From the NCBI GenBank assembly GCA_044892525.1, contig CM097888.1, positions 77,314,001 to 77,378,000 on the forward strand: a stretch of 64,000 nucleotides of DNA, read 5' to 3'. A program made the position numbers and the translations under genes. A model generated the notes under the pieces. It did no database searches. It was not told where the DNA came from and saw only the letters and a program-made list of their open reading frames with translations. Below are positions 7,993 through 61,739 of the stretch, piece by piece. The stretch is from Schmidtea polychroa (Eukaryota). Numbering within the stretch: position 1 is the first letter of the stretch; each line of letters begins with the position of its first letter.

Positions 7993-8466
7993 ATGTATAA
8001 TTATTCTTATAATTCAACTTTACCGGAAATTCCATCATTTAACGGATACAATTTATTCAAATCTGTGTTTTATTTTATTGTGTTCTTTATTTCTATTCTG
8101 GGAAACACTCACACTATTTTCTTTACTCGCAAATTACAAAAGAGATCAAAACTAAGCTACAGATCTTTGTACAGAATGATAATGCAATTGGCTTTTGCCG
8201 ACATTCTTGTATGCCTGTTTTTCGTATTGACACAAGCGATTTGGAATATCTTTGTCAGCTGGAGAGGAGGAAGTTTCTTGTGTAAACTGATGAAAATGGG
8301 TCAAGCATTCAGCATCTATTTAAGCACATATATCATGAGTCTCGTGAGTCTCGACCGTGCTATCGCAATATGTAAACCGATTCACCATCTACACAGCTGG
8401 AACAGAAATATTAAAATAATAATAATATGCCTTTGGATTTATTCTTTTCTATTGGCCATTCCACAA
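7993..8466 (+). CDS. GPCR exon 1 (N-terminus, TM1-TM4)
   Basis: ATG at 7993; N-glycosylation sequons NYS and NST in the short N-terminus; ends ...LAIPQ at donor CAA|GTAATC (8467), phase 0. The ORF-track tail VIHKYIIWTF is intron read-through. Confidence 0.92.
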
Positions 8467-11400
8467 GTAATCCATAAATATATTATTTGGACTTTTTAAA
8501 TAATTATTATTATTAATGTATTAAGCTAGTAAATGATAATATAATCTTTTTGCTACAAAGTATAGATTGGATAAAATAAAAAATTTCGATTATAAAAATA
8601 ATCCTTGTCGATTTCTTAGGATTTTAGTTGTTCCGAGTATCACATTCTGAATTGATCTTCTTTTTAAAATTAATTTTCTGCCTTCTCATTGGTTGAAATA
8701 ATTAAAAATAAATTAAAATAGAACTTTTCAAGAATTTAAATTCAAAATTAAAATAACTATCAAATTCAAATAAAAAGAATATAAAATTTTTAAATGTTCT
8801 ATATTTCTGTATTTTTTATAAAACCTTTAATAATTTTCTATATATAATTCAAAAATAACAAACATAATAAATAACAAAAATATAATAATAAACATATTTT
8901 CTTAGATGTCTGGCAGTTTTCCATTGTGCAAATGCTTTCTAGTTTGTGTTATTTGCTAGAACTTCCAATTTCCAGGACTCACGCGCCAATGTGTTTAAGT
9001 TCTTACATGATTTTCAAGTCGAATATGTCGTTGATGAATGGATTGTATCCCTTTCAATGTTCTTATTGTGATATCTGTTTTTATATTGGACTTTATTGAA
9101 GTTTAATTGTTGTTTATAGTTCTCCTCTTCAGTACATCAATTGGATATCCTTTGTTTCTCGTACATTATGAAATTTACATTCAGTAAGTATGAAAGTACT
9201 GATCTTTGGTGCATAAATATTTCTTCATGGACTGGTTTTTGTAGAATCTATAGATTGGAGTATCTACTTCCAAAACAACTNNNNNNNNNNNNNNNNNNNN
9301 NNNNNNNNNNNNNNNNNNNNNNNNNNNNNNNNNNNNNNNNNNNNNNNNNNNNNNNNNNNNNNNNNNNNNNNNNNNNNNNNNNNNNNNNNNNNNNNNNNNN
9401 NNNNNNNNNNNNNNNNNNNNNNNNNNNNNNNNNNNNNNNNNNNNNNNNNNNNNNTTTGTAAAAATAAGGAAACAAATCTCACACACAAAAGATTTTTTGA
9501 CAATTTTTTATTTAATAAAATTGTTTATTTGGATATAGAAAGTAAGGATGATAATCTGAATTGATCAATTGAAATTTTGGAATGACCATAACCGAGTCAG
9601 CTTCCCTGCAATATTGATATAATAAGGTTTTATTGGGGCTTCCTCAGTTTGTTGGGTTTACTATTTTTAATTGTGAATAATTGATAATTTTTACTAGTCA
9701 TTCTAGATTAAGAGACAGAAAAATTTCGATTATTTTGATGTTTTTACTCCATATTCAAACATAATCGAATATTTGACTAAAGAAGTTGTTGTTTCATTTA
9801 ATAAAGTTGTGACCAAAAGCAATAAAATCTAAACTCTATTGCAAATATATTTATCAACAATCGCATAACTCATTTTCATGAAGCTCTTGAAAAAATACCT
9901 ATTTCAAGAAAACTAAAGCTGGTTTACCAATATCTCAACCCGAGGATACAAGATCAATACTAATGAAGTCATCACCCCTTATATGAAAGGTTGATTACGC
10001 TAGAATCTCGTTAGGATTTCAATTGTTTAATAAGTATTCTGTTTACTTATATTTTACTTGCGTTGAGTAGATTTGTTTTCGTCTGCTTTTTATAAAATTT
10101 TTATTAGGTCCAAAAGTGAGCTATGAAATTTTTAACAAGGGGCTCGCGCGAGCCTCCTATAGCTNNNNNNNNNNNNNNNNNNNNNNNNNNNNNNNNNNNN
10201 NNNNNNNNNNNNNNNNNNNNNNNNNNNNNNNNNNNNNNNNNNNNNNNNNNNNNNNNNNNNNNNNNNNNNNNNNNNNNNNNNNNNNNNNNNNNNNNNNNNN
10301 NNNNNNNNNNNNNNNNNNNNNNNNNNNNNNNNNNNNNNNNNNNNNNNNNNNNNNNNNNNNNNNNNNNNNAAGCACATTGATCAAAAATACGTTTAACAAA
10401 AATATTTAAAAACGAGCACAGTTTTCTTATAATTTTGTAAATATATTCACATTAAACCCATAAATTCTATCGAATACAAGTTGAGTATGAAAATTTCGCT
10501 TATTATGGAACATTAGTATTAGAATATGAGAGAGGAGGTTTAATGTGAATACAAGGAGGTTTAAAATAGTTCTGTAGAGTTTACTGTAAAAATCTGTCTC
10601 AAGGCAGCTGGTATGTGTTCATTAATGCAATGAATACTTTCGCATGTATGTTATATTACAATGATAAAAATATCACATGAATTAAAACAAATATTTTTAT
10701 ATGAATCAGGAATTTTTTAACAAATACAAAGGGAAATGTGTTCTATTTTCTTCAGTTCAATGTATTTAATTCAATAAATATATTTAATAAATATATTCTG
10801 TTGTTTAATTTTCAGTTTTCTAATTTGCGTTTTCTTCTAATTTTGGTTTTGTATTGTTAAAAGAAATTAAATTTTTGTTTTGATTCTTTAATTTTTATTA
10901 TTTATGATAATTATTTTTTATTTTATATTTAGAATTTTTTTAAATAATTATTAAAAATCTCATTATAATATAGCTCATCAAAACACAAGATAAAAAGGAA
11001 ATTTTGGCAACTTTCCTATACAAATGTTAATTTAAGTGCAAAATATAAATTGAAGATAATTTATACAGAATTATCTTTATGAAAAAAATCTGAAAAATAT
11101 AATAATTAATAATTAAATTAATTAATTTATAACAATGAAAATAAAGATTTTATTATTTTAATCAATGTTCATTTTAATAAAAAAAATCAGTAAAATCTTG
11201 ACTAAATTCTCTCATTTCTACATCGTATTTGATAAATAAATTAATAATTTTGTTTCAGAATGTAAAAATATATCAGCAATGAGAAATATTACAAAAGTGA
11301 TTTTCTGTGAAAGTAATTAGCATTTTTATAGGCGTAACTGATGCTCTACAGATTATTTTTAGTTCTTTAAACAGTACAAAAAATAGGTTTGATGAATGAT

Positions 11401-13372
11401 TAGAAAAAAGCAGAAACTAAGCAATATATACAATGAAGATAAATAATTACCATATAAAAGTCAGAAAGTGCCTTGGTGAGTTCATGTCTCTTATTCTGTT
11501 TTGCTTACCTAGCATTTATATTTCAATTAAATTCCAAAATTGAGCTTTTTAACCACCCAAAAATTAAAAATATTTCACATCAAAGTTCACTTCTGTAAAA
11601 CAATTTAATAGGTATAATCAAATTTTGTTTTAAGTTTTACTATTTATATTTGTTTGAATATTATTTGTCTTTGTAGTATGAACATAAAATTTCAATAGTT
11701 TTATTCTTATCTTTATCATTTTATTTGTGATATCCCAATAACGAAACTAATTTATATAAAATAAAACCTGTTTATATGAAGCTTGTTTTAATAAGATAAT
11801 TACTTATTCTTCATTAGAGGCTAAAAGACTAAAATTTGTTTCTTTTATATAAAGCAATTTTTTATTGTATAAAAATCAGAACCTAAAACAAATTATCTTT
11901 TAATTATTTGTTTATATCAACGTTGGGTAAAGGGTATTCCATGAAAAAATTAAGAAGTTAAGAATAAATTTAATGCCATCGAAAACTTATGAAAAAATGA
12001 TTATTATTAATATTTAGTAAGTAATTTTTAGTACGCAGGATTTTTCATACGCCATGTTTACAAGTTTACAGATTTTTTATGTGATTTAGCTAATTTGCCA
12101 GTGATGTGATTTCCAGTGTATCAAGGAAAGTATGCAATAAAGCTGAATCAGCAATATTGTATATCTGGCGCGAAAAGAAATCTTTGTGTCTCCTGCATAG
12201 TAGTGATGAGGTCAAAAAGCTCGAAACTAGTCTATTATTAGGATTTGCACTGGGTATNNNNNNNNNNNNNNNNNNNNNNNNNNNNNNNNNNNNNNNNNNN
12301 NNNNNNNNNNNNNNNNNNNNNNNNNNNNNNNNNNNNNNNNNNNNNNNNNNNNNNNNNNNNNNNNNNNNNNNNNNNNNNNNNNNNNNNNNTGTTCTGTCTT
12401 TTGAAACTAGAAATGAAAGTTTAAAAATCAAATATTATCACGTCTCACTATGATACCTCCGACTCAACTTTTGTCTGATTATTTTCTGCCGATTTTCTAC
12501 CACGACTCATCTACTGTCACAATATAGCCAAACCACCAAGTCTTGTTTTTGAATTTGTTTAAATTTTTAATACAGATTTCATCAAGTTGTTTTTTACTCT
12601 GCGTACGGAGTATCCACAGTGATGTAATCTTTCAAATCTCTAAGCAGTTGTAGATTATATGATTTATTGGGCCGTGACAAAGAAATGTCTTACCTTGTAT
12701 ATAATTATAGTTGGGAACTGTTCCACTTCCTTAATGACCCGAACCAACTCAATATTTGCTGTTGTTGTCGTTGTCAAGATTCTCTCATCTCTCATTGAAA
12801 CCCACCTCATAACCGTCAAATAATGAGGTGTTTAGTCTCCGTAAACACAGACAAAATCGCCCACGAAAAGAGGTTGCTTCAAAGCCGAGTGTATATCGCA
12901 TGAGAATGTGTGACCTCATATTATTTTTCCATTTTTAAAAAATATTTTTAAAGGTTTTTGCTTCAAACAATGAGTATTTGAAATGAATGTTTATAGTTTT
13001 ATGCATAATTTTAACGATGAATAAATGTAGTTTTTAAATCAGTACTAAGATCCCTTATTTTGTCATATAAGTTAACTATATTTAAAGAGTTACAAAACTC
13101 ATTCAGTTCCGTAAGTAATTTTACAGGCGATTGTCAATCATGTTTTGGGGTCAGATTATTGTGGTAGTTACTCAAAAATATTTCTAATATTTTTGGGTTT
13201 ATAAAGAATTTCAGTAGAAATATTATAAGTTTTATTTTTAATAAAACAATTTTTCACAATTCTAATTCACTTGTTCAACAACACAGTTTGATTTAATAAT
13301 TTACTCGTGTAAATAAGAAATATGTATATCATATGTTCATCACTGACTGACTGACTGTGTAATGCTATTATA

Positions 13373-37400: not shown

Positions 37401-40400
37401 ACGAATTTGTGACGCCATAATAAGAGAAACCATCTAAAGCACTTAGTCTAGACACAATCTCTTCTAAAGTTTCACGTTGTAAATAACTGGATATTAATAT
37501 TTTATCCTTTTTAAATGTAGAGGCAGAAGTACTAGAACCTGCATCATTATCAGCTGCTTTTTTGATCAAAATTTTATGTACAAGTTTAAGGTGCGAAATC
37601 ATTCCACTTGTTGAACCACCATCACATTTAATAGATTTTTTACATAATCTGCATATAGCCTCTTTATTATTGTCTTTTCGCTTTTCAAAATGCTCCCAAA
37701 CATTTGAAGAACCCATATTCTATTTCAGTGCTCTTCAACCTTTCGCAGTCGTCGGAACCCTTCCAAAAACTTTCGCAGTCGTCGGAACCCTTCCAATAAA
37801 AATTTCCCCATGTATATGTGGGCATGTATATATGTATTCAATTGGGGTTGTCGATGTGGTAATTTATAAAAAAATAATGCACTTTATAATATAAAATTAT
37901 TTTATTTAAATAATTAATGGCAAAAATATAAAGTTTAACATAAAAAAAATAGAAATTTGATATTAAATGGTACTCAATGACTAGGTTGAGCCTGTTTTTT
38001 GCTACAAATTACATTGAAATCTGGTACAATTCTTGTAATTTGTAGCCTCATTTCATTTTCAGCATCTAATTTATTTCTGTATTTTGTTTTTGTGGCAATA
38101 TATAGCGAGAAAGATCTTTCACACATATAAGTGGTCACAAATGGCATCAAAATTTTAATAGCTTTTTTTGCGAGGTCAGGAAATTGGCAAAACATTTCAA
38201 GCCAAAAATTCAAAATCTCTCCTTCAAAAAATTTTATTTTTAATGTAGAATCAGTTGAAATATCAATGTATTGCTCCCTTTCTTTTATTGTTAAATGATA
38301 GTTATTGCAGTATTCAACAAATGGATTTTGAACCCAATCAAAATTTTCTATCTGAGCAGGAAGATATTCCACAAAAGTATCTTGTAAATCAGATAAATGT
38401 TGCAATACATATATTTTAACATTTTCATTAATTTCAGCATTATTGGAGAGTAAAAAATCATCCTCTCCCGCATCCTATGATTATAAATTTATTTTTAGAA
38501 ACTATATTCAAATTTCAAAGGATTATATATTGAAATTTAAAGAAAAAATCGAATTATTCTCAAATATTTTTGATAATTTATACTTTTCTTACATTTTTAG
38601 TAAATAAAAAAAATTTCAATGTCATTGTAGCATTTCATAAATTTTCAAGGCGTAAAATTTTACAACAGAAAATTTTCAATGTATAAAATATAAATTATTA
38701 TATGTTTATTTATATTGAAAACTTTTTTTATAAGAAATCATAAAATTTGTTCGCGGAACCCATAATTTTTTATACGGAACCCAAGGGTTCCGCGGAACCC
38801 AGGTTGAAGAACACTGTTCTATTTAAACAATATTCTATTTAAACAATATTCTATTTATTAAAAAATATTAATTTTTCAATATAATTTTATTTTAATAATA
38901 AATCAATAACGTTATAGATAAATCTTATATTACTTACGAGATCTGCATATAGCCTCTTTATTATTGTCTTTTAGCTTTTCAAAATGCTCCCAAACATTTG
39001 AAGAACCTATATTCTATTTAAACAATATTCTATTTAAACAATATTCTATTTATTAAAAAATATTAATTTTTCAATATAATTTTATTTTAATAATAAATCA
39101 ATAACGTTATAGATAAATCTTATATTACTTACGAGATTTTTTGTTTCTAAAAATTTGTTTCTATGTATTACGAAATATTATTTATTTTAAATAAAAAATC
39201 ACAAAATCACATGCACAGTTCTTTAAATAATTCAGTTTTACTGGTTTTTATATTTATTGTTATAGGATAAATATAATATTTTTTTATTTTGCACAATAAC
39301 CGTATTACCGGTAATTTAGTAAATATTTTTACCGGTAAACGGTAATGTAAAAATGCGCAATTTACTGGTAAACGGTAAAGGTTTTTACCGGTAGAGGAAC
39401 TATATTTGTATGGAATTATGATATTTTCCACAAATACTTTTCGGTGTATTTTAATGGTTCTTTTGATTTTTAATTAGTATTCTTGTGTGACTTGTGTTTT
39501 CTTTCCCTGGATTTATTTAATTTGGTCTTAATGATGGTAGTAGTGGTGTCAATTTATTTATTTTCCTTTCTTGTCATAAATATCATCATATCGTCAATTA
39601 CAATAATTCACCCTTCCAGGATCATTTATGTCATTTTTATGCTATTAATACGTCATTTAAAGACAATCCGTTGAAGACCACTACTAAAACAATTATTCTC
39701 AAATTAAAATTGCGGGAGTAAATAAAAATAATTTGCAATCATTGAAACGAAATTTTTATGTATAAGACGGATTTTCTTTGTCCTGAATATAACTCCCGTG
39801 GAGATTGAATTACAACAATTTAAATTAATAAAAATGTTTAACAAAATTAGTGAGTAATATGTTAAATAATGAATAAAATGTTTATAATATATTTCCTTTT
39901 ATTTATACGTAAATAAAAATCCATTGCATTAGAATAATATTCTAACAAACTGTAAATAATCCTCAACACGTCATTAGTATTTAGCAAAAATTAAACCAAT
40001 TCCCATATCAATATTAACCGGATTATTGCATTATCTCGACAATATTTCTACGCACTTTCCAATTTTTTTACTGTTGAAAACTAAAATTTAATTCTAAATT
40101 TTGTAAATCAGTTTATTTTAAACATTCAGTTATAACGGAAATATATTTGCAGAAATGTAATTGTAAATTCTTAAATTTTTTGTCTTTTGTCGGCTTAGTC
40201 GGTGCTGAATATCTACGATTAATCAATAATTCAATAATAGAGATTTTCATGGATTTATCATGGCACTCTGAATGGATTACGATTAGACCATTTTGTTAAA
40301 TAAATTCTTATATTTTATACATATATTTATTTTTATAATCACTATTTTTCTATTTAAATTTTGATTATTCTAAATTTTAAGCATTGTGATTTNNNNNNNN

Positions 40401-43400
40401 NNNNNNNNNNNNNNNNNNNNNNNNNNNNNNNNNNNNNNNNNNNNNNNNNNNNNNNNNNNNNNNNNNNNNNNNNNNNNNNNNNNNNNNNNNNNNNNNNNNN
40501 NNNNNNNNNNNNNNNNNNNNNNNNNNNNNNNNNNNNNNNNNNNNNNNNNNNNNNNNNNNNNNNNNNNNNNNNNNNNNNNNNNNNNNNNNNNNNNNNNNNN
40601 NNNNNNNNNNNNNNNNNNNNNNNNNNNNNNNNNNNNNNNNNNNNNNTAAGTAGCAGCATTTATTATTTAAAACAATACGGTACGTTTAAGTTCTTTCAGG
40701 ATCTTGAAGTCCAGTATGTCACTGATGAATGGGATATTCAGATAGAAATATTTCTGATTCTTTTGTGTTAATTCCCTAGATCTTCTTGGGGTAGAATTCA
40801 TTCTTTCAATGTCCTCACCTTGGTATCCGTTTCGGTGTAGGGTTTTATTGAAATTTGATTGTTCTTTAAAGTTTTCGTTTTTCTCCGTGCATCGATTGGC
40901 TATTCTTCGTTTCTCGTTTCTTATGACATGTACTTTCTGTAAGTATGGAAGCGCTGATCTTTGGTGCATAAATATTTCTTTGCGAGCTGGTTTTCTGTAG
41001 AACCCGTATGTTGGAGTATTTTCTTCTATTTTAATTTTCAAATCCAATAAATTAAGGGATCCATCTTCTTCCGGATACTTCCAGAATACTTTTCAAGTGA
41101 TATTTTAAGAGGAATATAAATTTTCGAATGAGTCCATTAAACTTATCATATCATTGATGGTAAAATGTGATGATTCAAACAAAAATTATTTCCTGCGAAG
41201 AGGTATAAAGATTAAAGAAAATATTTACTATTAAATATAAATTTTCAATGGAAAACAACAAAATGTACAACAAGAAATAAATAAATTAATAATTAATTAC
41301 ATTAATTAATTACGTAATCATAAAATAATTTAGAGAACTTTCTTCATTAGAAAAAAGTATTTGGCAGCATAATAATGATTAAATAAAATAATATTTATTT
41401 TGTTATTATTAGTGTTAAAAGTTTTTGAAAATTGTATATTAAACTACAGAAATCATTAATTATTTTTATTAATTTCTTATCTGGCACGTCAGGAAAAATT
41501 CAAGTCTTAATTATTTTGATAAGAACTGAGACTTTTCTAATGTAAATAATTAAATTACCGAATTCAGTAGTTTAATAAATTATTTTCTTTTTAATTTAAA
41601 GACTGCTTTAAATAATTAAATAAAAATATTTTGTGAAAAATACCGAATAAAATATTTATATTAGAAAATAATTATTAAAACAAATTGTATAAAATTAGAA
41701 ATAAATATTAAATCTTTTTCTTTTGTAAAAGTAAATTCAATAAAGAATTCTAAATATTCTCTTAGGTTCCTCATGTCAATAGGTCATACTTCCGGCAAAT
41801 TCAATTTCGTATTGTTTTCTCTAGATGTCATACAGGAAATTCACTATTAATTGTCAGATATGTAATTAAAAGTATTAAATGTAATTAGCATATAAACTTT
41901 CGAAAAGCGGCGGTTTTTAATCAACGTCCACTAGTCGAATGTAAGACTAAATCGTTTGCCTTATGACTTCAAGCATTGCAATTCAACCTTGCTCTATTGC
42001 TTAAACATTTTGTCGTAATTTACTATAATATTTCAAAAAGTATAGGCTGACTATGGCGCATCAAACTCATGTGCTAAAAGCGATTTGCGCATCTCGGAAG
42101 ATGTTATTAAAAATGCTGAACGGCAAACCATCAATTGTTGTCATTGATGGTATAGCACCACCGCCAAAGCGCTCCACATCATAGGCATCGATATCAAACT
42201 ATTGTTTGATATCGATACCTATGATGTGGAGCGCTTTGGCGGTGGTGCTATACTTTTACTGGGTTCTTCAACACTTTTTAATATATTTTGCACTGAGCAG
42301 ATTTTCTAGATCTTTCGCGTAAAAAATGCTCCAACACTGGAGTTTTATCAATTATACTTTACTTGCTTACTTCAAAGTTTGACATATGCGGTGATTTTAT
42401 TTTTCTTAAATATTTAATTTCCCTATTAAATAAAATAAATTTCAATTTGATATTTGTTATAATTTGGCATTTATGAAAAATCTTTCGTACAAAATGTGAA
42501 AAACTATAAATACACTTGCATAGAGTTGTGTACGTCGGGAGAAAGATAAAAGAAAGATAAATGAATGTAATGAAGTACCCAATTAAAGGCTTTTATCCTT
42601 CAAAGGGTTTATATTTCGGTTTGTTTTGTTTATATAATATGATTAAAGAAATACTCAAAACTCTTGAAATACACCAAATATTTTTTAACCAACAAATTAA
42701 ATAATTAAGTTTTATGCACGGAAAAATATCTGAAAAATCTATGGGTAACATAAATATAATGACGCGCTGATTGTTTGTTAATGATATACTTAGAGACTAG
42801 ACTAAACAAACATGAAAAAATAAATAAACATTTCCCCAATGGACAAATAACGACCCAATGACCACAAATATATTAAATATTTCCCTTAACATTTTGTCCA
42901 GAAGTTATCAAAAAAATAATTAAATTTTCATTATTTATTTATTTGTTTTAGTAGAACACAACAGTGTCACGATACTTTTTAATCCGCCAAAATCCGACGA
43001 CTGCGAGCATATAACAAATCAGTTTCCGTTTTACGACGACGTCAAACATTCAGGAAGTAACAACGACAACGAAACGATCGTGATAAATCGAATAAGTGAG
43101 AATTCGAACAATTTCCAAAAGCTTCTTTCACACAAAAAACAACAGTTAATGTCTCGGGCAAAAATCAAAACTTACAGAATGTCAGCGATTATTATTTCCT
43201 GTTTTTTACTTTGTTGGTTACCATATTGGGTTTATTACGTCTTAGTCACCTTGAAAACTGCGAGATTAATAAATTTCACTTTGGGAAAAAATATTTGGAT
43301 TTCAGTTTTCATTCAAAGCTTAGCCAGTTTGAATTCAGCATTTAATCCGATAATTTACGGATTTTTTAACAGAAATTTTTTTCTATTTTTCCTGAGAAAA

Positions 43401-43445
43401 AATTTTAGTGGACAAAACAATCGACGAAAAATGCAATTTCAATAA
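7993..43445 (+). CDS. GnRH-superfamily (probably corazonin-type) class A GPCR, 3 exons, 389 aa: join(7993..8466,18329..18530,42952..43445)
   Basis: The three ORF segments supply TM1-4, ECL2-TM5 and ICL3-TM7 in order. GT-AG sites have compatible phases (0 then 1), and exon lengths 474+202+494=1170 nt keep frame to TAA. Motifs: GN (TM1), LAFAD (TM2), WN..W...CK, LDRA, AIPQ, DFYQCTT, RAKIKT, CWLPY, NSAFNPIIY. Confidence 0.92.
8940..9280 (-). mobile_element. Penelope-like element RT thumb/linker fragment, degraded
   Basis: The minus strand gives ...FY(K)KPVHEEIFMHQRSVLSYL...EKQRISN*CTEEENYKQQLNFNK, clearly homologous to ORF 40667..41047. It runs into an N gap. Confidence 0.7.
12022..12257 (+). 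mobile_element. Dispersed copy of the hammerhead-containing 362-bp repeat unit
   Basis: Matches the reverse complement of about 59670..59920, including the junction between the spacer and the duplicated part. It is cut by an N gap at 12258. Confidence 0.85.
12197..12238 (+). ncRNA. Degenerate minimal type-I hammerhead ribozyme
   Basis: ATAGTA-GTGATGA-GGTCAAAAAGCTC-GAAA-CTAG-TC-TATTAT. The core C3 is changed to G and stem II is weakened. Confidence 0.6.
12420..12800 (-). mobile_element. mariner-type transposase remnant
   Basis: The minus strand gives TTTTTANIELVRVIKE (HTH region) and ...YIVTVDESW (mariner IVTGDETW-like first D motif), with stops and frameshifts. Confidence 0.65.
13376..13454. 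repeat. (TA)n microsatellite, about 39 units
   Basis: Uninterrupted TA run. Confidence 0.97.
14205..14514. mobile_element. hAT Buster/Charlie-type MITE, 310 bp
   Basis: TIR CAGTGTTTCTCA / TGAGAAACACTG; subterminal CGCGGCACACC motifs at both ends; 8-bp TSD AATTATAT / AACTATAT (7/8, central TA). Confidence 0.88.
16051..16089 (+). ncRNA. Minimal type-I hammerhead ribozyme (Penelope-type), second family
   Basis: CAC-CTGATGA-T-GACAG-GAAAA-CTGTC-GAAA-TATA-TC-GTG: intact core, perfect 5-bp stem II, palindromic ATATAT in place of stem III, only 3-bp stem I. Confidence 0.65.
16312..16740. repeat. Interspersed repeat of about 430 bp, copy 1 (unclassified)
   Basis: Colinear, highly similar direct copy at 29084..29515; no TIR or TSD identified. 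Confidence 0.85.
18329..18530 (+). CDS. GPCR exon 2 (ECL2, TM5)
   Basis: Acceptor ATTTTCAG|GTT at 18328/18329; VLLFDAYRGPWKTVDFYQCTT...YPLVYCVLILLIPIGILVTCYTVII; donor TACG|GTATGA at 18531, phase 1. Confidence 0.92.
23934..24246. mobile_element. hAT Buster/Charlie-type MITE, 313 bp
   Basis: TIR CAGTGGTTCTCAA / TTGAGAACCACTG; perfect 8-bp TSD GATTAAAC; subterminal GCGGAACAC motifs. Confidence 0.92.
25571..25878. repeat. Diverged local direct duplication of about 80 bp (230-bp offset)
   Basis: AATTTTAAAATGTG(T/C)AAACTTCATCATAAA...AAATCTTAAT occurs at 25571 and 25801. Confidence 0.6.
26191..26950 (-). mobile_element. Tc1 (DD34E) transposase pseudogene, internally deleted
   Basis: N-terminal HTH ...IAKAFEVQRSTVTKVIK...GRPCKTDERMDRTI. 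C-terminal [38 protein letters not shown] has 34 residues between D and E and ends CGYPTKY*. There is an in-frame stop and the middle is missing. Confidence 0.88.
29084..29515. repeat. Interspersed repeat of about 430 bp, copy 2
   Basis: Direct copy of 16312..16740. Confidence 0.85.
33350..34845 (+). mobile_element. Degraded, internally deleted hAT element
   Basis: The + strand gives KELCLILDCKTRWNSILNMLERF, LQPIKLAVETISKEN and IHPTSFDSEMVFSVSGLFCTKIKT. Termini are TAGGG...CCCTA with subterminal CGGTAAA repeats and a candidate TSD GTCAGAAC / GTCAAAAC (7/8). Confidence 0.75.
35613..35704. repeat. TTACCGGTAA/CGGTAAA subterminal motif cluster (3' side of the hAT)
   Basis: Several palindromic TTACCGGTAA and CGGTAAA units; a matching cluster lies at 39299..39393. 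The exact TIRs were not resolved. Confidence 0.7.
35799..37716 (-). mobile_element. Near-complete hAT transposase with BED finger, split by two 1-nt deletions (about 639 aa if repaired)
   Basis: ORFs 37240..37716, 36212..37195 and 35799..36131 join. Motifs: BED (VWEHF...CRLC...H...H), RFSLSVDEWTS (D1), INDGGAVM (D2), CLNH (CxxH), KTRWNS, TSTDNERTFS (E). Frameshifts fall at GGAAAC (about 37258) and GGGAAAAAAT (about 36216). Confidence 0.92.
37726..38816 (-). mobile_element. Nested non-autonomous hAT Buster-type element, 1091 bp
   Basis: TIR CAGTGCTCTTCAACC / GGTTGAAGAACACTG; perfect TSD TTCTATTT (37718..37725 and 38817..38824); ORF 37974..38405 is a Buster/Charlie C-terminus (PFVTTYMCERSFS...KTKYRNKLD...QAQPSH); 30-bp direct repeat at 37741..37796. 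Confidence 0.93.
38817..39135. repeat. 195-bp-period tandem duplication of the hAT leader plus transposase start
   Basis: 38817..38940 recurs at 39012..39135; 38941..39010 copies the first ~70 nt of the transposase CDS (37647..37716) with ATG changed to ATA. Confidence 0.88.
39299..39393. repeat. TTACCGGTAA/CGGTAAA subterminal motif cluster (5' side of the hAT)
   Basis: Same motif as 35613..35704, flanking the other side of the transposase. Confidence 0.7.
40655..41090 (-). mobile_element. Penelope-like element RT C-terminal/thumb fragment
   Basis: EEDGSLNLLDLKI...YRKPARKEIFMHQRSALP..QK...R...RC...LHRNGY...LNIPF fits the PLE pattern (F)LD..YRKP..H..S..P..K...NGY...IPY/F. There is no YxDD or GIY-YIG domain in view. 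Confidence 0.8.
41880..42390 (-). mobile_element. Heavily degraded hAT transposase 5' fragment
   Basis: The minus strand gives PVLEHFLRERSRKSAQCKIY*KVLK (BED-like), SMTTIDGLPFSIF and GKRFSLTFD*WTLIKNRRF, paralleling the 35799..37716 protein. Confidence 0.75.
42150..42253. repeat. Near-perfect palindrome: 50-bp arms, 4-nt loop, 1 mismatch
   Basis: 42150..42199 is the reverse complement of 42204..42253 except one position (C at 42186 opposite A); loop TATT. Confidence 0.97.
42952..43445 (+). CDS. GPCR exon 3 (ICL3, TM6, TM7, C-tail)
   Basis: Acceptor TTTGTTTTAG|TA at 42951/42952 (phase 1). The frame is open from there through EHNSVTILFNPP... into the tracked ORF 43080..43445. An AATAAA overlaps the stop codon and another follows at about 43504. 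Confidence 0.9.
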
Positions 43446-54596: not shown

Positions 54597-56338
54597 ATGG
54601 GTCAAGTTGGTTCAAGACAAGAGCAATTCTGGGAAGCTTGTAGTTTCGGTAGGGTTTGGCTTGTAAAACAAATGATTGAAGAGGGAATAGATGTGAATTG
54701 GGTTTCCCATGTGGTATATTAATATTAACTTAATTTATTTAAAACAATATATTTAAAAGCACGACAGCTGCCCAATCCATGTTGCATCCCAAGGAAAACC
54801 AGAAGTTGTTAAATTACTAATAGAATCTGGATGTGCTGTTGACTCCTTAGATTTTGTAAGTTCTAATAAAATTATCAGTTATACTAATTTAAAATTATTT
54901 TGCAAGTTCAATTGAATTAAATTTTAATAGATGATGCATTGAAAATCAATATAATATTTATTGAAATTTTTTTTATACTTTCATATTTGTTATATACCAA
55001 TTTTGGGTTGTACATAAATTTTAATATAAAAAATCGCAGTGAAAGATTTGAGATTTTGGTTTCTGCAATAAAGAATATTTAGTTTATGAAGTATTTAAAT
55101 ACACATCTTTTATTATAATCATTTTTATTTTATGGTGAAATTAAAATTCAATAATTTAATAATTAATTTATCTACCGCCCAAATGTACCGCTATGTAACC
55201 GAAAATTCGAAATCAATCAGTGATATTTATGAATAACATTGGGTTGTACTAATTTTTGGACATGATATTTAATAATATATTTTATACTCTGATATCAATA
55301 TTTATTCCAATATTTAATTTGTATAATTATCCGAAAATATGATACCTATAACAATTTACATCTATAATAATAGATCACCAATTTACAGATCACTTAAATA
55401 AATAACTATTTCCTATGACATGGATCAATTCGTGGACTAATTTGCCTAGATATCGAACTCAGTCTATATGAGCAGCATATTTAAGATTTATAGTTTGATA
55501 GTTTGAAACAGCCTTGGACAGCCCAAGTTGGGTTTACTGATAATATTGAAAAAAACGAGGGGCCTTGAGAAAACTTTGTCAGGGGATTTTGTCGACAATT
55601 GTTATATTTATAAATAATTTTTTTTACTAGCTACAAAATCATCCGAGTTTCCCTGATATTTCTATTGCCTCTTACTGTATTTTTTATATAGAATTTCAGA
55701 TTATTTTCTTTAATCTTTACGTCAAAATATTATATAATTATAATCTCATCGAAAATGAGTTTCTATTAATTGGGAAACAAAATTGATTCTAGAAAAAAAA
55801 CACCGCGCTTCATCATGCGGCAATGTCAGGAGATTCAGAAATTTGTGAGTTACTTATTCAGAGCAAATGCAACATTAATGCCATGAATCTATCTGGTTGG
55901 ACTCCTCTAATAAACGCTGCCTATTGGAATAATTACGCTTGCTTAGAATGCTTACTAAATAACAATTGTGATATTTCAATACAGAACAATGTATGTGAAC
56001 TGCTTTATTGTAGATACAATATTTATTGTACTGCTGAATTTTAAACGCTAGGACGGTCGAACTGCAATACATGAATTGTGCAGATCGAAATCCACTGAAG
56101 ACGAATTACTATTGAAATCTTTATCGTTATTGATTGAATGTGGATCAAGCATCCATGACAAAAGTGACAATGACAATCCATGGGATTCAGAAGTTTGATT
56201 ATATTCAATATATTGTCTAGTAATTACCACCAATTTCAGGCAGACTTCAGTCCACTCATGTTTGCTACATATCACGGTCATTCAAAATTGGTCGAATGTT
56301 TAATAGATTCTGGCGCCAATGTCAATGAGCGTGATCGA
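54597..56338 (+). CDS. Ankyrin-repeat protein, 3' partial: join(54597..54713,54760..54855,55793..55990,56052..56192,56240..56338)
   Basis: Five phase-0 exons with GT-AG introns of 46, 937, 61 and 47 bp. Repeats: CPIHVASQG-KPEVVKLLIESG, NTALHHAAMSG, GWTPLINAAYWN, GRTAIHELC, FSPLMFATYHGH. Donor CGA|GTAGGT at 56339, with the next exon not securely found. Confidence 0.88.
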
Positions 56339-56429
56339 GTAGGTTTAATGATTTATTTTCAATTATAAATCATTTTTCTATGATTATTATTATTTGACTA
56401 CTCTAATTTCTAATCAATAATTACCATCA

Positions 56430-58832: not shown

Positions 58833-59687
58833 TATATAATTATACCAGTAAATGCGGCATATTCGGATTGCGTATAATTACGGGAAGAATGTTTTGTGTG
58901 AAAATGCACAAATAAAGTGCAAAATTAAAAAACACTTAAAATTTTAAATTAAAAGAAAAATAATTAAAGTTGAAAATCAGTATTTGGTGAGGGGAAAGGT
59001 ATGAGTGAGTGAAAAATAAAATGTTAAAGATTAATATAATAACAAAAATTGATGGGGGATACCCAGGTAATGTTATTATTATAAATAAAAACTAATTAAT
59101 TAATTATTCAACATTTTGCTGGTAATCCTTAATCGATTTTCTATTATTTTTGATATCAATTAGAATTCTCAGAACCTTTTAGGGCTCAAAGCAACAATTA
59201 CAGATTTTGAAACCGCTGTTTGATAAGCGATCATCCAATTTGAAATGATAAATATATAATTAAATTCAGTGATTAAAAAGATGTAACTGTAAGATGTAAC
59301 TGTAACCTGTCAATGTAACTGTAACAAATTAATAATAAATCCAACAAAAGTTTTACACAACTTGTGTACGTATTGAAAACTGAACATGGATGGACGATAC
59401 TGGGATATTTCTAGGGATCATAGATTAGAAATAAAAGATAACCCAGAATTATTTTTTGGCATTAGGACCTTTACACCGAAGTCCGAAGATTAAATAACTT
59501 AAAAAGTTAAAGTATTAATTAATTAGAAAGAGGTTTCAAGAAATATCATATTATTGCAACTATTTTTTATATTGAATATATAAATAAGTTTAGAAATGGT
59601 TTAGGCAAGAACTTTACCATAAATCTGATAATAATTTCAGGTGTAAAATAAACAGTACAAGCTTTGTGATACCCAATGCAAATCCCA

Positions 59688-59729
59688 ATAGTAGACTAGT
59701 TTCGAGCTTTTGGCCCTCATTAGTACTAT
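59688..59729 (-). ncRNA. Minimal type-I hammerhead, downstream copy (core G5>A)
   Basis: ATAGTA-CTAATGA-GGGCCAAAAGCTC-GAAA-CTAG-TC-TACTAT; stems are intact but CUGAUGA reads CUAAUGA. Confidence 0.7.
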
Positions 59730-60049
59730 GCAGGAGACGCGAAAATTTCTCTTCGCGCCAGGTAAGTATACAATATTGCTGATTCAACTCTATTGCATAC
59801 TTTCCCGGTTACACTGGAAATCACATTACTTGCAAAATAGCTTGATCACAGAAAAATTCTGTAAACTTGTAAACATGGCGTATGAAAGATCCTAATCACA
59901 TCTGCGGACTAAAAAATTAATCGATACATAGAAACTGTTTACCTTTAGCATTTTTAACTTATAAAGTAATGGTGTAAAATTTTTTTGTCGGATGTCTCAC
60001 TTGAATAAAATAAACAGTACAAACTTTGTGATACACAGTGCAAATCCCA

Positions 60050-60091
60050 ATAGTAGACTAGTTTCGAGCTTTTGACCCTCATCAGTACTAT
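60050..60091 (-). ncRNA. Minimal type-I hammerhead ribozyme, intact core
   Basis: ATAGTA-CTGATGA-GGGTCAAAAGCTC-GAAA-CTAG-TC-TACTAT: perfect 6-bp stem I, 4-bp stem II with CAAAA loop, palindromic ACTAGT in place of stem III, GUC cleavage triplet (predicted cut between 60056 and 60055). Confidence 0.82.
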
Positions 60092-61739
60092 ACAGGACAC
60101 GCGAAGATTTCTCATCGCGCCATGTAAGTATACACTATTGCTTATTCAACTCTATTGCATACTTTCCCTGGTACACTGGAAATCACATCACTTGCAAACA
60201 ATAATCAATGTCAGATGTAATTAAACTATTTTTATTTTCCAATTTTAAATTAAGTTTATCTTAACTTACATTTTTAATAAGAATTCATTTAGTAAAATTC
60301 TGTTTCAATTGATATTTCGGATTTTTTCAGCTGGCCACAATATTTGGCCAAAAATAGATGAATCGGAAACGAATTTGTTAATTAAAATTTAATTATTAAA
60401 TATGATTATTTACTGATAGTTATATCAATAAGCGGTTTTTTGAATTTATTAATTATCAATTCTCTAATTGATAACAAACTTGAAAAGTATTAATTATATA
60501 AAAATGGAAATAATACTGGGATCACATGATTTGATCCAGATTAGTTATATAATTGATTATTTTTGCCTACTGTCTTTGGTTTTATTTTCAGCAAATAATA
60601 GATTTTGTATATTTTTGCTTGTTTCACAACTCATTTTAATTCAATAATAATATTTTAACAATAATCAATAAATTCATTAAATAAATTTAAAAATTTTTTA
60701 TTTGTATATTTTTGCATGCCTCGCAATTCATTTTTATTCAATAGGGATATTTTAACAATAAATAATAAAGTCATTAAATAAATAAATAAAATTATTAATT
60801 GATTTATTATATAAACTGAAATGGTTTTTGATTTTTGGAAGGCTGGTCTATTAGCCGCGCTTGACGAGCACAGATGTTATGTTAAAATGTTAATAAGCGA
60901 ACTACTTGTATGTACTTGTCAGAAGATTTAATTTTGTTTATATTTTAAATACAAAATATAAATATATTATTAAAACAAAAAAATATCCAAATAATATGTG
61001 GGGTATGTAATTAAAAATGAATAATGTCTTGAGCAATGTCATTATTCAACATACCACAGAAAAATACATGTTACACTTGTTATTGGTTAATTTTAATTGC
61101 GCCCCCAAAATGAATTTTTAAAACTAAATTTCATAGTTGATTTAAAATGTAATACAAATTTTAATGATAGACTGGTGTAGAGGTTATTTAGTTCATTGAA
61201 TCGTGGAACGGTTTGCATGGAGATTTAAAGTTAATTTTTCATTTTTTATATCTGTAACATAATCTGAAATATCTCATAATTGATTTCTACAAGTCTTATA
61301 AAAGCGAGATTCATTCTACAGATTATAGTTTCCTTACTGAAAAATTTGGAACCACCATAAACAATTGTTTGTACTTAGTGACAGCAATGGAGTAGAAATT
61401 GCAAATAATGCTTAGAATATTCGAGCTAATAAGGTCTTTGCAGAGACCAATTCTAGTATAAAATCTTTAATTTTTTTATTTACTCTTGACTTGTTTACTT
61501 TTCATTTGTTTTCATTACTAGAAAGTTTGTGTTACATTGGAAAATAAAAAATTTTGATCTATAGTCGTAATTAAAAAAAATGAAATTTTTTTAATTATAA
61601 AATGTTAGAAAAATAAATAAATTTAATTATATTCTTGACTTATATTGGACCTTATTATTTTGTTTTACTCTATCGGTAACCGTAGAAAGAACATTTAGTA
61701 AATTTAAAATTATAATGGATCATACAACATATTCAATTG

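What the first reader, a model, noticed from the sequence alone, without database searches (positions are those of the whole stretch)
59644..60198. Tandem minimal hammerhead ribozymes defining a 362-nt retrozyme-like monomer
Seen: two type-I hammerhead motifs on the minus strand exactly 362 nt apart. Each has a perfect 6-bp stem I (ATAGTA/TACTAT), a 4-bp stem II whose variant position stays paired in both copies (U.G versus C-G), and the palindrome ACTAGT where stem III should be. An upstream CGCGA(A)...(T)TCGCG hairpin is kept in both copies. Known: such stem-III-less hammerheads are typical of Penelope-like element pLTRs and of small non-autonomous animal retrozymes; they are thought to fold as dimers through the palindrome, and cleavage at successive copies releases unit-length RNAs that can circularise. 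Inference: this is a non-coding, self-cleaving mobile RNA family of 362 nt, probably mobilised by the Penelope RTs whose fragments lie at 8940 and 40655. At this locus one core is mutated (G5>A), so this copy may be only half active.
Basis: partly seen in the sequence, partly recalled or inferred. Interest (0 to 1): 0.8.

Follow-up and report, generated by a model that had tools for sequence, protein, structure and literature searches.

The report
Decayed hammerhead retrozyme insertion, 1.5 units
This is a real but worn-out 1.5-unit copy of a small, gene-less, ribozyme-carrying mobile element (an animal "non-LTR retrozyme") that occurs in very many copies in this flatworm-like genome; the kind is already described, so it is a new member, not a new system.

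Summary
On the minus strand a 193-nt direct repeat (60198-60006 and 59836-59644, 92% identical, spacing 362) carries one type-I hammerhead motif per copy. The upstream core is intact; the downstream core reads CUAAUGA (G5>A). A general hammerhead descriptor finds only the upstream motif in 64 kb (0.07 expected by chance).

The locus is a 5'-truncated copy (A) joined head-to-tail to a full unit (B), about 1.53 units. A third, decayed copy lies at 12037-12257.

Assembled contigs of a DNA run of what looks like the same individual show the family at hundreds to thousands of times single-copy depth. They also show a sharp common 3' end at 59644 and the same head-to-tail junction at other loci. Nearly all other copies carry the canonical G5 and an A-U pair in helix II.

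In one small run labelled RNA, three contigs close into a ~379-nt cycle. That fits a multimeric or circular form but does not prove a circle.

The motif is the canonical metazoan, dimer-dependent hammerhead, not the Penelope "min-HHR". No copy in the window adjoins a Penelope ORF; two degenerate Penelope-like ORF fragments lie elsewhere.

This matches published non-LTR retrozymes, already reported in platyhelminths. The scan has noted similar units elsewhere in this genome. Self-cleavage, circles and Penelope mobilisation remain untested.

The parts
60006..60198 (-). Copy A: 5'-truncated upstream copy holding the 3' 193 nt of the unit
   Evidence: Direct repeat D1. Other copies run on past 60198 with B-like sequence (loose ends behind 60198). 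The alignment with B and C shows that homology stops at 60198.
60046..60096 (-). Hammerhead A, core intact: helix I 6 bp plus a 4-bp extension, CUGAUGA, helix II of 4 bp (G-C, G.U, G-C, U.G), GAAA, ACUAGU, C17 at 60056
60100..60119 (-). 8-bp hairpin with GAAA loop just 5' of helix I, copy A; it has one U/U mismatch where most copies have A-U
59998..60005 (-). Junction UUCAAGUG between the 3' end of copy A and the start of copy B; it is part of the unit, not filler
   Evidence: It pairs with the 16-nt segment that other copies carry after 59938 (duplex -16.5 kcal/mol; 2 of 500 shuffles as low). The 322-nt contig of X2 runs through it.
59644..59997 (-). Copy B: full unit of 354 nt. It lacks 16 nt after 59938 that most copies have. 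Its 3' end at 59644 is the family's common end.
   Evidence: 32 contigs of X7 leave the stretch at 59644 with unlike flanks. Joints go from 59997 back to 59644/59648 at other loci.
59684..59734 (-). Hammerhead B, core CUAAUGA (G5>A at 59721); the site equivalent to the cut is 59694|59693
   Evidence: About 99% of family depth has G at 59721.
59738..59757 (-). 8-bp hairpin with GAAA loop, copy B (one G.U)
12037..12257 (+). Copy C: third family member, 87% identical. Its 5' limit is near 12025 and it is cut by the N run at 12258. Core AGUGAUGA (C3>G), with one mismatch in helix II.

Best explanation
The locus is an old, partly decayed insertion of a non-autonomous, ORF-less retroelement of the metazoan non-LTR retrozyme kind. 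It consists of a 5'-truncated copy joined head-to-tail to a full unit, 1.53 units in all.

Inferred life cycle of the family:
1. Head-to-tail copies are transcribed.
2. Two neighbouring hammerheads pair through the ACUAGU palindrome into a double hammerhead and cut after GUC.
3. Unit-length RNA of about 360-380 nt is released and probably ligated into a structured circle.
4. A reverse transcriptase supplied in trans, most likely from a Penelope-like element, copies more than one unit length. Copying starts at a fixed point about 50 nt 3' of the cut, which gives 1.x-unit insertions with a sharp 3' end and a variable 5' end.

At this locus the downstream core is dead (G5>A) and the upstream helix II is weak, so at most one cut is possible and no unit can be released.

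Shown here: the anatomy, the high copy number, the common 3' end, the recurring head-to-tail junction, the conserved core in other copies, and a closed ~379-nt contig cycle in one run labelled RNA.

Inferred only: cleavage, circularisation, and the identity of the reverse transcriptase.
For: Anatomy and significance.

A is truncated and B is full: copy C shares about 75 more nt upstream with B but not with A.

Family size: in the DNA contigs of X7 the flanks sit at depth 18.9, while the bins of the element sum to 8.6 thousand to 323 thousand, highest at the hammerhead/3' part. 2845 contigs were laid.

Common 3' end: 32 contigs diverge at 59644 with only 0.48 agreement among their flanks.

Head-to-tail junction at other loci: joints go from 59997, 59996 and 59986 back to 59644 or 59648.

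One source molecule for A and B: both carry G at position 10.2 (59715 and 60077), where more than 99% of family depth has A.

Conserved core: 59721 reads G5 in about 99% of depth. The majority helix II is G-C, A-U, G-C, C-G.

Cycle in X2: a 322-nt contig (59863-60168) and 117/118-nt contigs (59777-59891) overlap by about 30 nt at both ends in unit coordinates. Depths are 81.7 against 64.5+30, and the flanks are at 0.

Structured sense strand: circular MFE -87 kcal/mol against -68 +/- 5.4 for shuffles (z -3.5); the antisense strand gives -57.5.

No coding capacity: no stop-free run over 66 aa even in a trimer of the unit; GC 34.5%.

Penelope-like ORF fragments are in the same window.

The published class matches (PMC7229834; preprint 10.64898/2026.07.22.740005).
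Against: - No cleavage or circle was observed. Contigs have no ends or strands, and the junction of a circle is identical to the genomic head-to-tail junction.
- The kind of X1 and X2 is only guessed as RNA. A closed cycle can also come from k-mers shared by many head-to-tail DNA or RNA copies.
- Per genomic copy the element is not over-represented in X1: the X1/X7 depth ratio is 0.04-0.17 on the element against 0.48 on the transcribed flank.
- There is no compensatory double change among the three window copies.
- Rfam scores are far below gathering.
- No target-site duplication was found.
- The element's ends do not coincide with the ribozyme cut, so the ribozyme's part in mobility is not evident from the anatomy.
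- No autonomous partner sharing the 3' end was identified.
Confidence: 0.8

Rival explanations
1. It is an ordinary pseudo-LTR remnant of an autonomous Penelope-like element. On this view the 193-nt repeat is the pLTR of a once full-length element whose ORF was deleted, not an independent non-autonomous family.
For: PLE insertions typically have a 5'-truncated copy before a full one and carry hammerheads in their pLTRs (PMC8557442; PMC4209133). The hammerhead/3' 130 nt is about 10-40 times more abundant than the rest of the unit. It is also the only part found in the related organism B, so it could be shared with an autonomous element. Penelope-like ORF fragments lie in the window.
Against: Only 169 non-coding nt lie between the repeats. 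The same short junction (3' end joined to the 5' start near 59997) recurs at other loci and closes a ~379-nt cycle in X2. None of the three window copies adjoins an ORF. The hammerhead lacks the PLE min-HHR traits of a long helix II and a bulge after A9.
Confidence: 0.1
2. A single dispersed SINE-like hammerhead element was duplicated locally by unequal crossing-over or replication slippage, as in satellite birth. The 1.5-unit form would then not be a product of retrotransposition.
For: The 2026 preprint proposes local amplification of PLE-derived units into tandem repeats by unequal crossover. A and B share a private variant at position 10.2, as a local duplication would also give.
Against: The same head-to-tail junction occurs in several other contigs with different neighbouring letters. 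The upstream copy ends at an arbitrary internal point and the downstream copy ends at the family's common 3' end, which is the pattern of 5'-truncated reverse transcription. Copy C is independently 5'-truncated.
Confidence: 0.07
3. The hammerhead resemblance is a chance motif in an ordinary repeat with no RNA function.
For: Rfam scores are below gathering. There are no compensatory changes among the three copies. Two of the three copies have core mutations.
Against: 0 of 100 shuffles match the pattern, and the full descriptor gives 0.07 hits per shuffled window. 95.5% of cells are paired against about 40% with slid partners. The core and helix II are canonical in about 99% of family depth. The helix II loop resembles that of the Rfam HH9 consensus.
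Confidence: 0.02

Closest known systems
Metazoan non-LTR retrozymes (Cervera & de la Pena 2020, PMC7229834), e.g. the mussel 350-390-bp and axolotl 330/350-bp repeats
   Same: Both have a type-I hammerhead inside short head-to-tail repeats of 150-450 bp. Both lack an ORF, LTR, PBS and PPT, have low GC and many genomic copies, and have a highly self-paired predicted RNA. Both co-exist with PLEs. Like the axolotl/newt motifs, helix III is 1-2 bp with a palindromic loop, so a dimer is expected to be needed. Platyhelminths are already listed in that paper as carriers.
   Different: This locus is a 1.53-unit copy with one dead core, not an array. The family has a sharp 3' end 50 nt past the cut. 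There is no recognisable internal loop 1 for the loop1-loop2 contact; instead an 8-bp GAAA-capped hairpin sits next to helix I. Expression as circles is not shown here.
Penelope-like element pLTRs with min-HHRs (Cervera & de la Pena 2014, PMC4209133; Craig et al. 2021, PMC8557442)
   Same: The insertion architecture is shared: a 5'-truncated copy before a full copy, and a sharp 3' end. Both have a hammerhead near the 3' end and a palindromic 15.2-16.2 region. PLE-like ORF fragments lie in the same window.
   Different: There is no RT-EN ORF between the repeats. The hammerhead has a 6-bp helix I and a 4-bp helix II without the extra nucleotide after A9, whereas PLE min-HHRs have a 7-8 bp helix II, a 4-5 bp helix I and that bulge.
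Newt satellite 2 / Schistosoma Sm-alpha hammerhead repeats
   Same: These are dispersed or tandem ~330-bp non-coding repeats in animal genomes with a type-I hammerhead whose weak helix III favours double-hammerhead cleavage.
   Different: There is no sequence relationship beyond the ribozyme core. Sm-alpha is described as SINE-like with a Pol III promoter, which was not looked for or found here.
Rfam Hammerhead_HH9 (RF02275)
   Same: It is the best-scoring Rfam model. The core, the 4-bp helix II and a CAAAA-type loop 2 are shared.
   Different: The scores are 20.6 and 19.8 bits against a gathering score of 52. Loop 1 and most of helix III are deleted in the alignment. It is not a member by Rfam's criterion.

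Membership tests
Hammerhead ribozyme, type I (canonical metazoan form) | Conserved core C3 U4 G5 A6 N7 G8 A9 ... G12 A13 A14 ... H17 | tested here: met
   Met in copy A. Not met in B (G5>A) or C (C3>G). About 99% of family depth has G5.
Hammerhead ribozyme, type I (canonical metazoan form) | Helix I of about 6 bp open to the flanks; helix II of 4 bp with G10.1-C11.1; helix III of 1-2 bp with a small palindromic loop (PMC4209133) | tested here: met
   22 pairs with 95.5% of cells paired, against about 40% with slid partners. ACUAGU is invariant in all three copies.
Hammerhead ribozyme, type I (canonical metazoan form) | Compensatory covariation in helices I and II | tested here: inconclusive
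   Only three copies: 0 double changes, 6 one-sided pair-keeping changes, 3 breaks. The family majority turns G.U into A-U at 10.2 and U.G into C-G at 10.4.
Hammerhead ribozyme, type I (canonical metazoan form) | Reaches the Rfam gathering score of a hammerhead model | tested here: not met
   0 hits at gathering. HH9 gives 20.6 and 19.8 bits against 52.
Hammerhead ribozyme, type I (canonical metazoan form) | Self-cleavage after H17 | not testable with these tools
   Contigs give no molecule ends; table 6 is empty.
Metazoan non-LTR retrozyme | Type-I hammerhead within short (150-450 bp) head-to-tail repeats present in many copies | tested here: met
   Spacing 362, 1.53 units. The head-to-tail joints recur at other loci, and depth is hundreds to thousands of times single-copy.
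Metazoan non-LTR retrozyme | No ORF, LTR, PBS or PPT; GC under 50% | tested here: met
   The longest stop-free run in a trimer is 63-66 aa; GC is 34.5%. No ORF of 60 aa or more lies on the sense strand. PBS and PPT were not searched for formally.
Metazoan non-LTR retrozyme | Expressed as unit-length linear and circular RNA | tested here: inconclusive
   Contigs of X2 (kind guessed as RNA) close into a ~379-nt cycle at depth 82-94 with flanks at 0. This is compatible with a circle, a multimer or shared k-mers of tandem copies.
Metazoan non-LTR retrozyme | Highly self-paired predicted RNA | tested here: met
   Circular MFE -87 kcal/mol, z -3.5, 62% of bases paired; the antisense strand is much weaker.
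Metazoan non-LTR retrozyme | Co-existence with autonomous PLEs in the genome | tested here: inconclusive
   Two degenerate fragments were found with the HTH_animal (PF26215) region typical of RT/GIY-YIG proteins. No intact PLE was seen in the window.
Penelope-like element min-HHR / pLTR | Helix II of 7-8 bp, helix I of 4-5 bp, unpaired nucleotide between A9 and 10.1 (PMC4209133) | tested here: not met
   Helix II is 4 bp, helix I is 6 bp (10 with the extension), and there is no bulge.
Penelope-like element min-HHR / pLTR | Repeats flank an RT plus GIY-YIG ORF | tested here: not met
   169 non-coding nt lie between the repeats. Copy C has no adjoining ORF either.

The most novel reading that the evidence does not exclude
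The family may be a live planarian retrozyme whose ~380-nt RNA circulates as an abundant circle. It would be reverse-transcribed from that circle starting at a fixed internal point about 50 nt 3' of the ribozyme cut, so that every insertion is a 1.x-mer with a sharp 3' end. That would give direct genomic evidence for the proposed rolling-circle template of PLE-type insertion. It would also give a tractable model, since planarians offer RNAi and neoblasts, for what these circles do.
Probability: 0.4. Interest if true: 0.45.

Novelty: new member of a known kind. Interest (0 to 1): 0.3.

Why it matters
The finding adds a well-delimited flatworm family to the known animal retrozymes. It gives exact limits: a common 3' end 50 nt past the cut, a junction sequence that belongs to the unit, and a GAAA-capped hairpin next to helix I.

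The 1.x-unit architecture with a fixed 3' end bears on an open question. Do PLE-type reverse transcriptases copy circular or multimeric ribozyme-processed RNAs, or do they jump between linear templates? The locus itself is a relic, so its value is for annotation and comparison rather than as a new mechanism.

Tried and rejected
1. Rfam at gathering threshold found nothing. Only sub-threshold HH9 hits appeared at E 0.04-0.07.
2. A weak U4 snRNA match on the opposite strand (16 bits, E 0.68) was not reproduced in copy C. I rejected it as chance.
3. A metagenome scan with a 15-nt anchor outside the ribozyme returned 119 loci. BLAST showed that none belongs to the family.
4. The target-site duplication search found only an AT-rich 6-mer, ATTATT, at unequal distances from the two ends. 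It is not convincing.
5. Pfam found nothing in the 126-aa Penelope-like fragment. The link to HTH_animal comes from a 95%-identical database protein and from feature-based neighbours.
6. The search of earlier findings by sequence and by a five-word query returned blanks.
7. Tandem Repeats Finder does not report the 362-nt period, because there are only 1.5 units.
8. Reading X1 as proof of strong expression was rejected. Per genomic copy the element is less represented in X1 than the transcribed flank.
Full report
**1. Observation**

Read on the minus strand, 60198-59644 holds two copies of a 193-nt segment: 60198-60006 (copy A) and 59836-59644 (copy B). They are 92% identical with a start-to-start spacing of 362, and they differ at 15 positions, 7 transitions and 8 transversions.

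Each copy carries a type-I hammerhead layout. In A:
- CCUG, a 1-nt bulge, then AUAGUA (helix I, 5' strand)
- CUGAUGA
- GGGU-CAAAA-GCUC (helix II)
- GAAA
- the palindrome ACUAGU ending in U16.1
- C17 at 60056
- UACUAU-UGGG (helix I, 3' strand)

B has CUAAUGA (G5>A at 59721) and C-G in place of U.G at pair 10.4-11.4.

The motif is not a chance match:
- The exact pattern occurs once in the window and in none of 100 dinucleotide shuffles.
- A general descriptor that I wrote finds only copy A in 64 kb, against 0.07 hits per shuffled window. It allows C3-G8 or U3-A8 cores, an optional bulge, helix II of at least 4 bp, a palindromic helix III region and helix I of at least 4 bp.
- Rfam gives nothing at gathering. 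It gives sub-threshold Hammerhead_HH9 matches to both copies: 20.6 and 19.8 bits, gathering score 52.

**2. Anatomy of the locus**

A third copy lies at 12037-12257 on the + strand, 87% identical. It abuts the N run at 12258, which I did not try to fill. It has a C3>G core change and a helix II mismatch.

C shares about 75 more nucleotides upstream with B but not with A. So A is 5'-truncated at 60198 and B is the longer copy. The locus therefore reads: truncated copy A, the 8-nt junction UUCAAGUG (60005-59998), then the 354-nt copy B. That is 1.53 units.

There is no ORF. The longest stop-free run is 63-66 aa even in a trimer of the unit. GC is 34.5%, against 22-28% in the flanks.

**3. Family-level evidence from public runs (contigs, at least 85% likeness)**

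Run X7 covers both flanks at an even depth of 18.9 with no differences. It is therefore DNA, probably of the assembled individual.

- *Abundance.* Over the element, 2845 contigs are laid. Summed depth is 8.6 thousand to 323 thousand and is highest over the hammerhead and 3' tail. The tool warns that this is not a copy number. It does show a family present hundreds to thousands of times, with the 3'-biased profile expected from 5'-truncated reverse transcription or from a tail shared with other families.
- *Common 3' end.* Thirty-two contigs leave the stretch exactly at 59644, with flanks that agree only 0.48 with each other. This marks a common 3' end with different insertion sites.
- *Junction at other loci.* Several contigs join 59997, 59996 or 59986 back to 59644 or 59648, so the head-to-tail junction also exists elsewhere.
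- *Conserved ribozyme.* Nearly all family depth differs from this locus at a few ribozyme positions:
  - 59721 reads the canonical G5.
  - 59715 and 60077 read A at position 10.2, which makes an A-U pair.
  - 60075 reads C at position 10.4.
  - 60114 and 59744 make the GAAA hairpin a perfect 8-bp stem.
  The ribozyme is thus better conserved in the family than at this locus.
- *One source for A and B.* A and B share a private variant at 10.2, so they come from one source molecule or one event.
- *Missing 16 nt.* Most copies carry 16 more letters after 59938. On the sense strand these pair with the start of the unit, including the 8-nt junction (duplex -16.5 kcal/mol; 2 of 500 shuffles as low). 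The junction therefore belongs to the unit.
- *Age.* X1 holds the low-side flank joined to the element, with 18 differences in 386 nt. The insertion is therefore old and shared between lineages.
- *Related species.* Organism B holds mainly the hammerhead/3' part; one contig covers 59644-59849.

**4. RNA evidence**

Run X2 is small and its kind is only guessed as RNA. It has no depth on either flank and only four laid contigs.

A 322-nt contig (59863-60168, depth 81.7) and two variants of 117/118 nt (59777-59891, depths 64.5 and 30) overlap by about 30 nt at both ends once 60168 is translated by 362 to 59806. That is the k-1 overlap of a closed de Bruijn cycle of about 379 nt, which equals 362 + 16 + 1.

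A circular RNA, a multimeric transcript, or k-mers shared by many head-to-tail copies would all give this. It supports a closed or tandem unit but does not prove a circle.

In X1 the element is abundant in absolute terms. Per genomic copy it is less represented than the transcribed flank: the X1/X7 depth ratio is 0.04-0.17 against 0.48. X1 is therefore no evidence of special expression.

The 362-nt monomer, cut site to cut site, folds more stably than shuffles as a circle (-87 against -68 +/- 5.4 kcal/mol, z -3.5, 62% of bases paired). It also folds far better than its complement, at -57.5 kcal/mol.

**5. Mechanism**

Helix III here is a single A-U pair, or two pairs, around a palindromic CUAG. 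According to PMC4209133 and PMC7229834, such motifs cleave poorly alone and efficiently as dimers.

In the double hammerhead of established knowledge (Forster et al. 1988, as cited in PMC4209133), the core of one copy acts on the site of the other. From that I infer the following for a transcript of this locus:
- The intact core A would cut at 59694|59693.
- The dead core B would leave 60056|60055 uncut.

Cofolding of two motifs is more stable than two separate monomers (-27.9 against -22.4 kcal/mol). The predicted MFE is not the catalytic fold, however, so this is weak support. Either way the locus can be cut once at most and cannot release a unit.

The sharp 3' end 50 nt past the cut, the variable 5' ends and the 1.x-unit form fit two models:
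- more-than-unit reverse transcription of a circular or multimeric template (PMC4209133, PMC7229834);
- the partial-tandem insertion habit of PLEs (PMC8557442).

I could not tell these two apart.

**6. Penelope link**

The ORF at 40667-41047 (minus strand) has one 95%-identical database protein carrying PF26215, HTH_animal. Its feature-based neighbours are HTH_animal clusters, and the structural neighbours of one of those clusters are proteins that combine HTH_animal with RVT_1 and GIY-YIG, the PLE make-up. My own Pfam scan found nothing in it.

A degenerate homologue lies at 8993-9270, 76-84% identical at the DNA level, with stops and frameshifts.

Both fragments abut N runs, and neither adjoins a hammerhead copy. 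PLE relics are therefore present, but mobilisation by them is inference only.

**7. Comparison with what is known**

The element meets the structural definition of metazoan non-LTR retrozymes (PMC7229834). That paper already lists platyhelminths among the carriers. A 2026 preprint (10.64898/2026.07.22.740005) argues that such retrozymes derive from PLE pLTRs.

The hammerhead is the canonical metazoan form, not the PLE min-HHR: it has no long helix II and no bulge after A9.

Notes of this scan report several similar retrozyme-like units (371, 373 and about 355 nt) and many hammerheads elsewhere in this genome, which follow-up agents took for a planarian. Those notes are unchecked leads. Even so, the scan has evidently met this kind before on other DNA of the same genome.

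**8. Verdict**

The element is a new member of a known kind, and the locus itself is a relic. Interest is modest.

The bench tests proposed use natural intact copies.

Noticed in passing
window 7993-8499 (+) and 43080-43445 (+): Two ORFs look like parts of a rhodopsin-type GPCR. The first has TM1-3 with a DRA(I) motif and the second has TM6-7 with NPIIY. They may be exons of one gene separated by a ~35-kb intron that holds the Penelope-like fragments and copy C.
   Followed up: no
window 55823-56368 (+): Short ORFs with ankyrin-repeat-like sequence lie 3.3 kb from the retrozyme insertion. In run X1 the flank 59318-59643 is covered at depth 9 and the other flank at 0, so the insertion may sit at the edge of a transcribed region.
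   Followed up: no
window 60604-60797: An AT-rich 97-nt tandem repeat of 1.9 copies, 82-85% identical, lies 400 nt from the insertion. It is unrelated in sequence to the retrozyme unit.
   Followed up: no
window 8993-9270 and 40667-41047 (both minus strand): Two degenerate fragments of one Penelope-like ORF family (HTH_animal region). Each directly abuts an N run (9281-9454 and 40393-40646). Copy C of the retrozyme also abuts an N run (12258-12389), so the N runs in this window tend to sit at repeat-element borders.
   Followed up: partly
window 59938/59939 (family level): This locus lacks a 16-nt segment that most family copies carry. The segment forms the 3' arm of a long-range stem with the first ~20 nt of the unit, so the copy here has also lost a structural element besides its core mutation.
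   Followed up: yes
window 59749-59877 (+): A weak U4 snRNA covariance-model match (16 bits, E 0.68) lies antisense to copy B. It was not reproduced in copy C and was judged chance. I mention it only because other notes in this genome report U1 5' ends fused to hammerheads.
   Followed up: yes
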